Program-made: the position numbers and the translations under genes
Shown here: positions 22,760 through 25,826 of the stretch, piece after piece
Layout: every line of letters begins with the position of its first letter
Position numbering within the stretch: the first letter of the stretch is position 1
Notes under the pieces: model-generated
Databases searched by the model: none
The model's input: the letters and a program-made list of their open reading frames with translations, nothing else
What the model was told of the DNA's origin: nothing
Assembly (NCBI GenBank): GCA_904063045.1
Contig: CAJFCJ010000002.1
Coordinates: 4,298,179 to 4,362,178, forward strand
Direction of reading: 5' to 3'
Length of the DNA: 64,000 nt
Source of the DNA: Dimorphilus gyrociliatus
Lineage: Eukaryota; Animalia; Annelida

Positions 22760-23499
22760 GGATATTCTGTTATAGAAACCATCTATTTCTCGACGATCAC
22801 TCTAGATTTTCCATTTGCTTCTTGCCAATGTAAATCTGTATTATCGCCCTCTGCAATACTATCCAAAGTCAACGGTTCCTGCCTAGTCCTTATATGACAG
22901 AGACACTACTTTACTAAGTTTTCTTACAATCGTTGATAAATTGCGATGTCGTTGGTAAGTGAAGAAAATTTCGGCAAGATGCTAATATAATTCCCTATTT
23001 GGACGTAACTGATATAGTAAATGCAGGTGTCGCCATCTTTGAGTACGTTTTTTTCTGAAACACTGTAGTTAATCATTTGTCCGTCAGGGAAAGTATCGAT
23101 TAATACTTGGTCATGTAAGAAGATTTATGATTAAAAATTGCGTTTACGACCGCAACAGTTAAGAGACGTCGATAAACTGTATCCTTATTTATTTTCTGTT
23201 GATACTTTCTAATGACTTGATGCAGGATCAATAGTTCATGCAATATACATCTATAGACTTATTGTGAAGTCTCAAAAAGTGTTAAAAATCTGTAACCAAT
23301 TTATTTGATGTTAAATCATTGATAGAAGATAGTAAATAGTAATACAAGAATATCTAAAAGTAACATATTTATTATGTTTTTCTAACTTTTCAGGGATTTT
23401 ACAAATAGCCATCTAGTGGTTATTCTTTCGTAAAAATTGATTGAACAAGTGTTCATTTCCCGTCATGTATCGCCACGTCGACTGAATTAGACTAAAGAA

Positions 23500-24728
23500 A
23501 TGTATAGAGGTGTATTCTTCTTTCTATTTGCTAGTTATTTGTTATCAATAATTAACGCTAAAACTGCTGATGGCGAAGGTGGTTATCCAGGCTTTCAATA
23601 TGAATTCAAAGTTGAAGTTGGAGCTGGTAAAAAAGAATGTTTCTATCAATATGTAAAGGAGCAAGCCCAAATGCATTTATCATTTGAAGTGTTGAGAGGA
23701 GCAGACAGAAACGTCGATGTCACTCTAAAGAAGGATAACAGAGTTATCGAAAGTCATATGTGGACTTTTGAGGGTAGTTCTGACATTGACATCACTGAGA
23801 GAGGTGTTTATAGTTTATGTATCGACAATTCCTTCGCAAGATTCTCAAGCAAAGTAGTATACATCTATTTTGTTGCTTATGTTACTGATGAATGGCAAAA
23901 ATATACGGAAGAGTTAAAAAGTTTTCAAATATCAGTTAATAATTTTACGGTAAGTTATTGGTGCTTTTTAACGCCAGCCGTCTGGTATATTGCTTTTTCA
24001 TTTAATTGCGATTGATTGAAGAATGATAAACAAAAAATAATTTGCTTCATTTGATTGACCATAGCGTGATTAACCATCCTAGAATTTATTAAACTGTGCG
24101 AAATTTAGCATACCAAACTTAAGTATTTACATTCAAAGGCATCTTATCTATTGCTTGCTAAATCAATTACTGTATGTATCAAAATTGATTGTTAATAATT
24201 TAATACTCTCATTCTAAAAATGGTTCATTATCTATAAAAAAAACAGAAAACTTTCAACTTTCTTTCTACTAGTTTAAGAAAAATGCACATCTATCTTCAT
24301 TCTTTTAGTAAAAGTTCAGAATCCGACACAAGATTATTATCTCTGAGTGCTGAAATGGTTGACTTCTATTCCTCTATGTTTGTCTTTGTTCTTATAAGTT
24401 CAGCAGTCATTCAAGTATTTTTTGTCAAGGGATTCTTCAATCAATTTTCAGTAATAAAAGTTTGAGATAACATTAAATAGTTTATGTTTATATTTGACAG
24501 AGAAGTGCACGAAGTGTACAAGAGGCTTTACAAAAAACCAAAGCTGAATTATTTGAAAAAAGAAAAATTGACATGTACCATATGTATTTGATGATTGATA
24601 CATCTTGGTCAATTAACTTTTGGTCTACAATATTTTTAATTGTACTAATATGTACATCCGCTCTACAAGTTTTCTTCGTGAGGCGACTATTTAAAATTAA
24701 TAAGCTACCAAGCGTACCCCGACCTTAG
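23500..24728 (+). CDS. TMED: p24/TMED cargo receptor (gamma-like GOLD domain); exon 1 23500-23949 splices to terminal exon 2A (24247-24465) or 2B (24501-24728)
   Basis: Signal peptide. GOLD domain 'FKVEVGAGKKECFYQ...GVYSLCIDNSF'. Phase-0 donor ACG|gtaagt. Both downstream phase-0 acceptors open frames encoding coiled-coil + TM ('...QVFFV(K/R)') + tail + stop. Confidence 0.9.
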
Positions 24729-25207
24729 ATGGCATAGACTGATGTAAGACTTTATTCTATGAAGTTAGGAATTATAAAATTACTAACATTCTTGGGTGCC
24801 TTGAACAACTTTTTATGAGTGGGTGTTTTTGCGAGATTTCGAAAAAACCACCCCATTTTAGAATATTTACTTTCTATCAAGATAACTGCTCATCTCTCTT
24901 CTAATTTATTTTAATACAACTTAAGGCGTTAGGACCATCCAAAATTCATCACTCACACAATTTTAATCATCAATTTATAATGGCTTCAAACACAAATCAA
25001 GTTAATAAAAAATAAAAAATGAATAATAACATTAGCTGAAAATTGATAGACAACCTGATATTGAGAATTGGCTATTTTACGAAAAATGGTAAAATATTCC
25101 AAAAAGTATACGTGTCTATAAACTAGTTAACTACAATAACACTAATGATTTTTTTATCTCGTAATCGTATCTTATATAAAACAAAAGGGATTTAATAAAA
25201 AGATCCA

Positions 25208-25826
25208 TCATATACAGACATTTTCTTGATCCTGCATAGCTTCATCGACATCTCTCATCAATTTCTTATGCACCATTTCTCTTGGCGTCATTGATCCTTG
25301 AACAACCTTAAATGGAGAACGGCTAGATATCTTCTTCCTTTTAAATTTTCGTTTTGGCGTCGGTGAATTTGAAGCTGAGCTCATTTTCTTCTCAAGAGTG
25401 AACGATCTATTTGGAAAATGATAGTAACGGTTACTTGTTCCAACTTTCCACTTAGATTGGATTATGGTTTTTATAGAGTATTTACATTTATTCGTTGTTA
25501 TTATTGAGAAATATATTTGCTTATACTTTGAAATAATACTAAGTGTGGTAATATAACCGCTTTTAGTAAGGTACTAACCTATTAAGCTCGGGATTAGATC
25601 GAGACTTGTGGATTTCATAGATCGGGGTTCTTGCAAAGCTAGCACACGGTGATCTTGGATCTGAGATCATTTCTGGAGTTTTCTGAACTTCAATTGGTGT
25701 TCTTTGTATTTCCAAAGAAGGAGAACGTGGGTCGAAAGCTGGATTAACCGACCGATAATTTCGTGGCGTCGAATATACTTCGTTCGGGAGAGATTCTGTA
25801 AATTCCTTAACACTCTGATTCCCCAT
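25208..25826 (-). CDS. CDCA3: Cell division cycle-associated protein 3 (Tome-1) homolog, ~148 aa; exons 25826-25579, 25406-25208
   Basis: Duplicated 'DPRSP...RTP' motif (DPRSPSLEIQRTPIEV; DPRSPCASFARTPI), N-terminal MG, C-terminal KEN-like 'DQEN'. 447 nt, in frame. Confidence 0.8.

What the first reader, a model, noticed from the sequence alone, without database searches (positions are those of the whole stretch)
23500..24728. p24/TMED gene with two tandem duplicated terminal exons: one GOLD domain, two alternative coiled-coil/TM/cytoplasmic tails
Seen: exon 1 ends ACG|gtaagt (phase 0). It can join acceptor aaacag|24247, giving KTFNFLSTSLRKMHIYLHSFSKSSESDTRLLSLSAEMVDFYSSMFVFVLISSAVIQVFFVKGFFNQFSVIKV*. 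It can also join acceptor tttgacag|24501, giving RSARSVQEALQKTKAELFEKRKIDMYHMYLMIDTSWSINFWSTIFLIVLICTSALQVFFVRRLFKINKLPSVPRP*. Both are stop-free, nearly the same length (72 vs 75 aa) and align over the p24 'xNFWS...QVFFV(K/R)xxF' TM motif. They are only 35 nt apart. AATAAA (24453-24458) and ATTAAA (24472-24477) sit on or next to exon 2B's branch/pyrimidine region, so polyadenylation after 2A and splicing to 2B should compete. Known: p24 coiled coils set hetero-oligomer partners, and the tails (FF, C-terminal Val, basic residues) set COPII/COPI binding. Tail 2A ends ...FF...V, a COPII-like export signal; tail 2B has RRLFK and no terminal Val. Inference: a splicing/polyadenylation switch gives two paralogue-like p24 receptors sharing one cargo-binding domain. 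I do not know of this arrangement in p24 genes.
Basis: partly seen in the sequence, partly recalled or inferred. Interest (0 to 1): 0.82.

Follow-up and report, generated by a model that had tools for sequence, protein, structure and literature searches.

The report
p24 gene with two alternative tails
A cargo-receptor (p24/TMED) gene of the tiny annelid Dimorphilus gyrociliatus has a duplicated last exon, and RNA and cross-species evidence show both copies are used, giving two receptors with one cargo-binding domain and different stalk, membrane anchor and sorting tail.

Summary
The window is Dimorphilus gyrociliatus, and the gene is DgyrCDS1899, annotated only as exon 1 + exon 2B. Exon 1 (23500-23949) encodes the signal peptide and GOLD domain. 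Exons 2A (24247-24465) and 2B (24501-24728) are 35 nt apart, both in phase 0. Each encodes a 41-aa stalk, a 19-aa membrane helix and a short tail.

- **Both junctions exist in RNA.** Intron-free contigs of a public run carry exon1>2A and exon1>2B, at similar contig depth.
- **Both exons are conserved.** Two related species keep both open, at the same lengths and with the same acceptors. dN/dS is 0.13-0.20 for 2A and 0.06-0.07 for 2B.
- **Which copy is ancestral.** 2B carries the tail of mollusc and arthropod TMED5/6-like orthologues. 2A is the derived copy, with an FF motif and a terminal Val. The Lottia orthologue has one terminal exon.
- **The proposed polyadenylation switch is not shown.** The 2A contig runs through the spacer into 2B, so the protein choice is an alternative 3' splice-site choice.
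- **New here.** A conserved 13-14 nt intron element, and a conserved 5'UTR element, are each complementary to the 3' end of exon 2A. This suggests competing RNA pairings, without covariation support.

It is a new member of a known class, tandem-duplicated alternative C-terminal exons. I found no report of this in p24 genes.

The parts
23095..23338 (+). 5'UTR exon (minimum extent; true start unknown)
   Evidence: RNA-derived contig record 1 covers 23095-23338 and is joined to 23394-23949.
23339..23393 (+). 55-nt GT..AG intron in the 5'UTR
   Evidence: Joint 23338>23394, skips 55 nt, GT..AG. The sequence was read.
23394..23949 (+). Exon holding the rest of the 5'UTR and the CDS 23500-23949 (signal peptide plus GOLD domain, 150 codons, ends in phase 0)
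   Evidence: Pfam PF01105 E 1.2e-18. 100% identical to residues 1-150 of DgyrCDS1899.
23433..23448 (+). 5'UTR element complementary to the 3' end of exon 2A (16 nt, 94%). It lies inside a 60-nt block (23429-23488) that is 90-100% identical in relative B.
23950..24246 (+). Intron removed in the 2A isoform (297 nt). In the 2B isoform the intron is 23950-24500 (551 nt).
   Evidence: Joints 23948/9>24246/7 and 23948/9>24500/1, both GT..AG. Zero contig depth over 23972-24214.
24011..24024 (+). Conserved intron element, perfectly complementary to 24432-24445 in exon 2A
   Evidence: with the same pair found in relative B. The 13-nt core is invariant in three species. It is part of the MFE, centroid and consensus folds. 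A perfect inverted repeat of 14 nt or more occurs in 0.3-0.4% of shuffles.
24247..24465 (+). Terminal exon copy 2A: 72 codons plus TGA. Stalk 41 aa, membrane helix at residues 42-60, tail KGFFNQFSVIKV.
   Evidence: Conserved in relatives B and C, omega 0.13-0.20.
24432..24448 (+). 3' end of exon 2A, the common arm of both long-range complementarities. It codes for the tail motif G-F-F-N-Q-F.
   Evidence: Five consecutive codons show no synonymous change in three species.
24453..24458 (+). AATAAA hexamer inside the last 2A codons. Its use as a poly(A) signal is not shown.
   Evidence: The 2A contig runs past it.
24466..24500 (+). 35-nt spacer. It is 3'UTR in the 2A mRNA and the end of the intron (pyrimidine tract and AG) for the 2B acceptor.
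   Evidence: It is 36-40 nt in relatives, with poor sequence conservation apart from the acceptor.
24501..24728 (+). Terminal exon copy 2B: 75 codons plus TAG. Stalk 41 aa, membrane helix at residues 42-60, tail RRLFKINKLPSVPRP. This is the annotated and ancestral form.
   Evidence: Its tail matches mollusc and arthropod orthologues. Omega is 0.06-0.07.

Best explanation
This is a gamma-type (TMED5/6-like) p24 cargo-receptor gene of Dimorphilus gyrociliatus. Its last coding exon was duplicated in tandem in the dinophilid lineage.

The single exon 1 donor (23949|gt) is spliced to one of two acceptors. One is the weak proximal acceptor at 24247, which has an A-rich tract. The other is the stronger, U-rich distal acceptor at 24501.
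- Use of 24247 gives an mRNA that ends its reading frame in 2A and carries 2B as untranslated sequence.
- Use of 24501 gives the annotated 225-aa protein.

Both proteins share the signal peptide, the GOLD domain and the N-F-T sequon. They differ in the 41-aa luminal stalk, the membrane helix and the cytosolic tail. 2B keeps the tail of the orthologue group. 2A is a faster-evolving but constrained copy with a K/R-G-F-F motif and a C-terminal valine.

Shown: both junctions, both conserved reading frames, and purifying selection on both. Inferred: the two isoforms differ in p24 partners, lipid contacts or coat binding, and hence in trafficking. Also inferred: conserved RNA pairing helps set the acceptor choice.
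For: - **Identity and annotation.**
- **Family.** Pfam matches on all three exons. The best solved relatives are TMED5 and TMED1. Orthologues are named TMED5/6-like.
- **RNA.** Run X1 has zero depth in the intron. It has GT..AG joints 23948/9>24246/7 (312-nt contig, depth 109.5, continuing to 24529) and 23948/9>24500/1 (depth 95.7). No 2A>2B joint is seen.
- **Conservation.** Relative B (L001) and relative C (L011) keep the donor, both AG acceptors, and open frames of exactly 72 and 75 codons.
- **Selection.** Nei-Gojobori omega is 0.04-0.09 for exon 1, 0.13-0.20 for 2A and 0.06-0.07 for 2B. The excess of synonymous changes has P from 4e-5 to 8e-14.
- **Origin by tandem duplication.** The best match of 2A in the whole genome is 2B, at 32 bits. 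Tails of the other p24 genes score 23.5 bits or less.
- **Ancestral copy.** The 2B tail matches orthologues (VFFVRRLFK...PR).
- **Outgroup.** The Lottia orthologue has a single terminal exon behind an intron at about the same point of the alignment.
- **Architecture.** The membrane helix and tails sit at identical positions in both copies.
Against: - RNA evidence comes from one run, kept only as contigs and not recorded as RNA. Contig depth is a poor measure of isoform ratio, and strand, ends and poly(A) sites cannot be seen.
- No protein-level evidence exists for either isoform.
- 2A alone scores below the Pfam cut-off (19.2 against 25.9 bits) and evolves 2-3 times faster than 2B.
- The functional difference between the tails is untested.
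- dS between species is near saturation (about 1-2), so the omega values are rough.
Confidence: 0.85

Rival explanations
1. Splicing/polyadenylation switch. Cleavage at a poly(A) site just after 2A competes with splicing to 2B, and this competition decides the isoform.
For: AATAAA at 24453-24458 is kept in all three species, and a U/GU-rich stretch follows it. Cleavage before commitment to the 2B acceptor would force use of 2A.
Against: The only contig with the exon1>2A joint runs through the spacer into 2B without a break. AATAAA lies in constrained coding sequence, so its conservation needs no poly(A) role. ATTAAA is not conserved. Once exon 1 is joined to 2A, the poly(A) site no longer changes the protein.
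Confidence: 0.2
2. Competing long-range RNA pairings steer the acceptor choice. This adds to the best explanation and does not replace it. The intron element 24011-24024 pairs with the end of exon 2A (24432-24445). That loops out the 2A acceptor and brings the donor within about 130 nt of the 2B acceptor, which favours 2B. The 5'UTR element 23433-23448 pairs with the same 2A sequence and would compete, which favours 2A.
For: - These are the only two inverted repeats with seeds of 11 nt or more in the pre-mRNA, in both D. gyrociliatus and relative B, and they share one arm.
- The 13-nt intron core is invariant in three species inside an otherwise diverged intron.
- Spacing is fixed: donor to arm 60-61 nt, and arm to 2B acceptor 54-56 nt.
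- A perfect inverted repeat of 14 nt or more occurs in 0.3-0.4% of shuffles.
- The helix is in the MFE, the centroid and the three-species consensus fold.
- The 10-mer ATTGATTGAA occurs three times in the 64 kb window, all three in this gene.
- The five codons of the exon arm show no synonymous change.
- Known analogues exist: Dscam1 docking/selector and 'balancer' pairings (PMC8791459, PMC4691838).
Against: - No compensatory change is seen, because both arms are invariant.
- The duplex energy is only modestly better than shuffles: z -1.4, -3.3 and -2.7.
- The whole region is not more stable than shuffles, z +0.77.
- The exon arm is constrained by coding for the FF tail motif.
- The repeated sense motif TTGATTGA, including a further invariant intron copy at 24051-24058, could instead be a site for a protein acting on RNA or DNA.
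Confidence: 0.3
3. 2A is a decaying duplicate, and its junction is splicing noise.
For: Only 2B is annotated. 2A scores below the Pfam cut-off and evolves faster.
Against: The frame is open, with the same length and acceptor in three species whose synonymous sites are near saturation. Omega is 0.13-0.20 with P of 4e-5 or less. The junction contig depth is comparable to that of 2B. The stop lies in the last exon, so the exon-junction rule for mRNA decay does not apply (inference).
Confidence: 0.04

Closest known systems
Tandem exon duplication-derived C-terminal substitutions (Kondrashov and Koonin; Martinez-Gomez et al. 2021, PMC8373072: 77 C-terminal cases in human, e.g. GNAO1, NECTIN2, PRKCB)
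   Same: The final coding exon is duplicated in tandem. The copies are homologous and used alternatively. Both are conserved, so the isoforms differ only in a homologous C-terminal module.
   Different: No TMED gene is mentioned in that paper's main text. That class is described as generated by alternative poly(A) use. Here the RNA contig shows the upstream copy's mRNA reading on through the downstream copy, so the event behaves as an alternative 3' splice-site choice within one terminal region only 35 nt apart.
p24/TMED family, gamma subfamily (TMED5/TMED6, Drosophila logjam/opossum; review PMC7045115)
   Same: Signal peptide, GOLD domain, stalk, one membrane helix with a conserved Gln, and a short tail. 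The 2B tail matches the orthologue group.
   Different: In known p24 biology, diversity of stalk, membrane helix and tail comes from separate genes. The splicing event I found in the literature is a Tmed2 exon 3 inclusion event (PMC4448682). Here a single gene supplies two C-terminal modules to one GOLD domain.
Bivalve orthologues of the same gene (Ruditapes philippinarum isoforms X1-X3; P0008-P0010)
   Same: The same orthologue group also has isoforms that swap one segment, homologous between X2 and X3.
   Different: In the clam the swapped segment lies in the middle of the GOLD domain and the tail is constant. In Dimorphilus the GOLD domain is constant and the tail module is swapped.
Docking/selector and balancer RNA pairings in Dscam1 and other mutually exclusive exon clusters (PMC4691838, PMC8791459, PMC6071210)
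   Same: Conserved long-range complementarity would loop out the proximal exon and counteract first-come-first-served splicing. Two alternative pairings share one arm.
   Different: The common arm lies inside the coding end of exon 2A, not in an intron upstream of each variant. No selector was found for 2B. There is no covariation and no mutational evidence. The exons are terminal.

Membership tests
p24/TMED (Pfam EMP24_GP25L, PF01105) | Luminal GOLD domain | tested here: met
   Exon 1: E 1.2e-18, 68.3 bits against a cut-off of 25.9, profile positions 2-122. PDB relatives are TMED5, TMED1 and TMED2.
p24/TMED (Pfam EMP24_GP25L, PF01105) | C-terminal stalk, single membrane helix and short cytosolic tail, for the 2B isoform | tested here: met
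   2B: 33.5 bits, above the cut-off, profile positions 120-182. The hydrophobic 19-mer is at residues 42-60 and the tail is 15 aa.
p24/TMED (Pfam EMP24_GP25L, PF01105) | C-terminal stalk, single membrane helix and short cytosolic tail, for the 2A isoform | tested here: inconclusive
2A alone scores 19.2 bits, below the cut-off of 25.9, although on the right profile positions 123-182. It has a hydrophobic 19-mer at the same place, the conserved Gln, and a 12-aa tail with FF. It aligns to 2B at E 2e-8.
p24/TMED (Pfam EMP24_GP25L, PF01105) | N-terminal signal peptide | not tested
   A hydrophobic N-terminus of 20 residues was read directly. No signal-peptide predictor was available.
p24 gamma subfamily (TMED1/3/5/6/7) | Groups with gamma members rather than alpha, beta or delta | tested here: inconclusive
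   Best-hit evidence only. PDB gives TMED5 at 1e-18 and TMED1 at 1.7e-13, ahead of TMED2 at 1e-8. Orthologues are named TMED5-like or TMED6-like by NCBI. No tree was built.
Tandem exon duplication-derived C-terminal substitution | Two adjacent exons homologous to each other | tested here: met
   35 nt apart, same phase, 72 against 75 codons, the same Pfam positions, BLASTP E 2e-8. Each is the other's best match in the genome.
Tandem exon duplication-derived C-terminal substitution | Alternative rather than joint use in mRNA | tested here: met
   Joints exon1>2A and exon1>2B are seen, and no 2A>2B joint. This rests on one run, kept as contigs only.
Tandem exon duplication-derived C-terminal substitution | Both copies conserved as coding sequence | tested here: met
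   Three species. Omega is 0.13-0.20 for 2A and 0.06-0.07 for 2B.
Tandem exon duplication-derived C-terminal substitution | Generated through alternative poly(A) site use (as the class is described in PMC8373072) | tested here: inconclusive
   The 2A contig continues through the spacer into 2B. Contigs cannot show poly(A) ends.
Docking/selector-type competing RNA structures | Conserved complementary arms placed so as to loop out or activate alternative exons | tested here: met
Docking/selector-type competing RNA structures | Compensatory changes that keep the pairing | tested here: not met
   The 13-bp core is invariant in all three species. Only one-sided G-U changes occur in the extension.
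Docking/selector-type competing RNA structures | A selector for each alternative exon | tested here: not met
   Only exon 2A carries the arm. A candidate pair with 2B (24051-24061 with 24606-24616) is broken in relative C.
Docking/selector-type competing RNA structures | Splicing changes when an arm is mutated and is restored by compensation | not testable with these tools
   Needs minigenes or genome editing.

The most novel reading that the evidence does not exclude
The choice between the two p24 tails is set by two mutually exclusive, conserved long-range RNA pairings that share the 3' end of exon 2A as their common arm. An intron element would loop out the 2A acceptor and favour 2B. A 5'UTR element would compete for the same arm and release 2A. 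This would be a docking/selector-like switch acting on terminal exons in an annelid with a miniature genome. It would give regulated production of two cargo receptors with one GOLD domain and different coat-binding tails.
Probability: 0.3. Interest if true: 0.7.

Novelty: new member of a known kind. Interest (0 to 1): 0.5.

Why it matters
p24 proteins act as hetero-oligomers. Their partner choice, lipid contacts and COPI/COPII binding are ascribed to the stalk, membrane helix and tail, while the GOLD domain is linked to cargo and dimer contacts.

Here nature has made a domain swap within one gene. The same GOLD domain is placed on either the ancestral gamma-type tail or a derived tail with an FF motif and a terminal valine. 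Both forms have been kept by selection in at least three species. This gives a clean system to ask what the C-terminal module alone contributes to localisation and partner choice.

It also corrects the annotation, since a second protein product of DgyrCDS1899 is missing. It offers a compact (under 1.3 kb) candidate for RNA-structure-guided acceptor choice outside arthropods. Together with the clam isoforms, it shows that one p24 orthologue group has repeatedly diversified by isoforms that swap an exon-sized segment, in different modules.

Tried and rejected
- **More relatives.** I searched proteins with exon 1, with the full annotated protein and with 2A alone, and searched 1.84 billion representatives with 2A. 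Only two relatives turned up. One further hit, P0016, is a repetitive 712-aa protein and was judged spurious.
- **Metagenome scans.** One scan by protein and one by a 27-base conserved DNA pattern found nothing. No fourth species was available to test covariation.
- **Ruditapes locus.** It is not on record, so the clam gene structure was inferred from its isoform proteins only.
- **Other complementarities, rejected.** The pair between the end of exon 1 and 2B (23922-23931 with 24550-24559) and the pair between the second intron motif and 2B (24051-24061 with 24606-24616) are both broken by a synonymous change in relative C.
- **Whole-region fold.** It is not more stable than shuffles, z +0.77.
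- **Micro-intron.** A 41-nt intron from 24460 to 24500 that would join 2A to 2B in frame was considered. No such joint is in the RNA contigs.
- **Capture from a paralogue.** I considered that 2A was captured from another p24 gene. This was rejected, because its best match is 2B.

Full report
**Observation**

- An ATG at 23500 opens a 150-codon exon that ends ACG|gtaagt at 23949, in phase 0.
- Two AG acceptors follow. Reading from 24247 gives 72 codons and a TGA. Reading from 24501 gives 75 codons and a TAG.
- The two reading frames are 35 nt apart.
- Pfam EMP24_GP25L matches exon 1 on profile positions 2-122 (E 1.2e-18), 2A on positions 123-182 (1.4e-3) and 2B on positions 120-182 (5.6e-8).
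- The two tail exons align to each other at 43% identity over the membrane helix, E 2e-8.

**Organism and annotation**

Exon 1 plus 2B is 100% identical to DgyrCDS1899 of Dimorphilus gyrociliatus, 225 aa. Only the 2B form is annotated. The best solved relatives are TMED5 and TMED1. Mollusc and arthropod orthologues are named TMED5-like or TMED6-like. The gene is therefore gamma-type by best hits; no tree was built. The genome holds about eight p24 loci.

**RNA evidence**

One public run (X1, 2017, kept as Logan contigs, kind not on record) holds the locus.
- It has no depth over 23972-24214 and shows GT..AG joints, so it derives from spliced RNA.
- There are three joints. The first removes a 55-nt intron in the 5'UTR (23339-23393). 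The second joins exon 1 to 2A (23948/9>24246/7). The third joins exon 1 to 2B (23948/9>24500/1).
- The two alternative joints are the two arms of a bubble between the exon 1 contig and the downstream contig. Their depths are 109.5 and 95.7. Contig depth is a poor measure, so I only say that both are well represented.
- The 2A arm is one 312-nt contig that runs from exon 1 through 2A and the 35-nt spacer into 2B, to 24529. At least part of the 2A mRNAs therefore carry 2B as 3'UTR.
- No 2A>2B joint is seen.
- The 2A stop lies in the last exon, so the exon-junction rule for mRNA decay does not apply (inference).

**Conservation**

Two relatives were found as genomic contigs.
- Relative B (L001; exon 1 is 73% identical in protein) came from the exon 1 search.
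- Relative C (L011) came from the search of protein representatives with 2A. Its run is cited in a coral-microbiome paper, so it is probably a worm in an environmental sample.
- Neighbouring genes are the same in both relatives.
- Both keep the donor, both AG acceptors, and open frames of exactly 72 and 75 codons.
- Nei-Gojobori omega is 0.04-0.09 for exon 1, 0.13-0.20 for 2A and 0.06-0.07 for 2B. dS is about 0.5-2.4 where it can be computed. The excess of synonymous over non-synonymous changes has P from 4e-5 to 8e-14.
- Most of the intron between the conserved islands is only 30-50% identical and is full of indels.
- 2A is thus a constrained coding exon, evolving two to three times faster than 2B.

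**Origin and polarity**
- In the whole genome, 2A and 2B are each other's best match, at 32 bits. Tails of the alpha-, beta- and delta-type genes score 23.5 bits or less against 2A.
- The 2B tail (VFFVRRLFK...PRP) matches the tails of scallop, clam, limpet, tick and scorpion orthologues. 2B is therefore the ancestral copy.
- The Lottia orthologue (L010) has four coding exons and one terminal exon. Its last intron lies at about the same point of the protein alignment, just after the N-x-T sequon. No second tail exon is found in the intron or within 6 kb downstream.
- The duplication is therefore younger than the annelid-mollusc split and at least as old as the ancestor of the three dinophilid-like species.
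- Dimorphilus has lost the two introns inside the GOLD domain and kept this one. At 297 or 551 nt, it is far longer than the genome's median intron of 66 bp (PMC7854359).

**The two products**

Both exons encode a 41-aa stalk, a hydrophobic 19-mer at residues 42-60 with the conserved Gln, and a short tail.
- Tail 2A is (K/R)GFFNQFS(V/I)IKV in all three species. It has a diaromatic motif and a terminal valine, features known from alpha- and beta-type p24 tails and linked to COPII binding (PMC7045115 and general knowledge). It has no dilysine.
- Tail 2B is (R/K)RLFKINK...PRP.
- The stalks share no detectable similarity.
- That the isoforms differ in partners and trafficking is inference.

**How the choice is made**

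The proximal acceptor has an A-rich tract and the distal acceptor a U-rich one, in all three species. This fits a weak-proximal, strong-distal competition (inference).

The 2A contig reads through. ATTAAA is not conserved. AATAAA sits in constrained codons.

A new observation bears on the choice.
- In the pre-mRNA from 23394 to the 2B acceptor, only two inverted repeats have seeds of 11 nt or more, in both D. gyrociliatus and relative B. Both share one arm, the 3' end of exon 2A at 24432-24448.
- One partner is an intron element at 24011-24024 (14 nt, perfect). Its 13-nt core is invariant in all three species within a conserved island.
- The other partner is a 5'UTR element at 23433-23448 (16 nt, 94%). 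It lies inside a 60-nt block that is 90-100% identical in relative B.
- Spacing is fixed: donor to intron arm 60-61 nt, and exon arm to 2B acceptor 54-56 nt.
- A perfect inverted repeat of this length occurs in 0.3-0.4% of dinucleotide shuffles.
- The helix appears in the MFE, the centroid and the three-species consensus fold.
- The 10-mer ATTGATTGAA occurs three times in the 64 kb window, all three in this gene.
- The five codons of the exon arm show no synonymous change.

Several results count against a role for this pairing.
- There is no compensatory change.
- Duplex energies are only modestly better than shuffles, z -1.4 to -3.3.
- The region as a whole is not unusually stable.
- The exon arm is constrained by coding for the tail.
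- The sense motif could instead be a protein-binding site.

I rate an RNA-pairing role at about 0.3. If real, the intron pairing would loop out the 2A acceptor and favour 2B. The 5'UTR pairing would compete with it. This is analogous to the docking/selector and balancer pairings in Dscam1 (PMC4691838, PMC8791459).

**Comparison with what is known**

Alternative homologous C-termini from tandem-duplicated terminal exons are a recognised class. Human has 77 such cases, described as arising through alternative poly(A) use (PMC8373072). No TMED gene is mentioned there. A TMED review mentions no isoforms (PMC7045115). The p24 splicing event I found in the literature is a Tmed2 exon 3 inclusion event (PMC4448682). 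NCBI isoforms of the clam orthologue swap a mid-GOLD segment, not the tail. This finding is therefore a new member of a known class, in a family where it appears unreported, and it adds a missing protein product to the annotation.

**Limits**
- RNA support comes from one run of contigs.
- There is no protein evidence.
- Only three species are available.

Noticed in passing
window 23429-23488: A 60-nt block of the 5'UTR is 90-100% identical to relative B, while flanking sequence and even the signal-peptide codons diverge. It holds a six-codon upstream ORF (ATG 23465 to TGA 23485) and the ATTGATTGAA motif.
   Followed up: partly
window 23339-23393: A 55-nt GT..AG intron lies in the 5'UTR of the p24 gene, with an upstream non-coding exon reaching at least to 23095 in the RNA contigs.
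   Followed up: partly
P0008, P0009, P0010 (Ruditapes philippinarum isoforms X3, X2, X1): The clam orthologue has three annotated isoforms that are identical except for a segment in the middle of the GOLD domain (homologous between X2 and X3). The same orthologue group is thus diversified in the cargo-side domain there and in the tail module here. Scallop orthologues are also listed as isoforms X2 and X3.
   Followed up: partly
L010 6001-9292 (Lottia gigantea orthologue): The limpet gene has four coding exons. Dimorphilus has lost the two introns inside the GOLD domain and kept only the intron before the stalk, which is the one that hosts the duplicated exon.
   Followed up: partly
window 24051-24058 and 24181-24191: There are further copies of the TTGATTGA motif in the intron. 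The copy at 24051-24058 (TTTGATTGAC) is invariant in all three species, and its role is unexplained.
   Followed up: partly
window 24500-25400 and beyond: One 5952-nt RNA contig runs from 2B through the 3'UTR into the convergent minus-strand neighbour (ORF 25208-25384, conserved in relatives B and C). The 3' ends of the two genes probably overlap or abut.
   Followed up: no
If real, exon duplication as a source of isoforms may recur in this compact genome.
   Followed up: no
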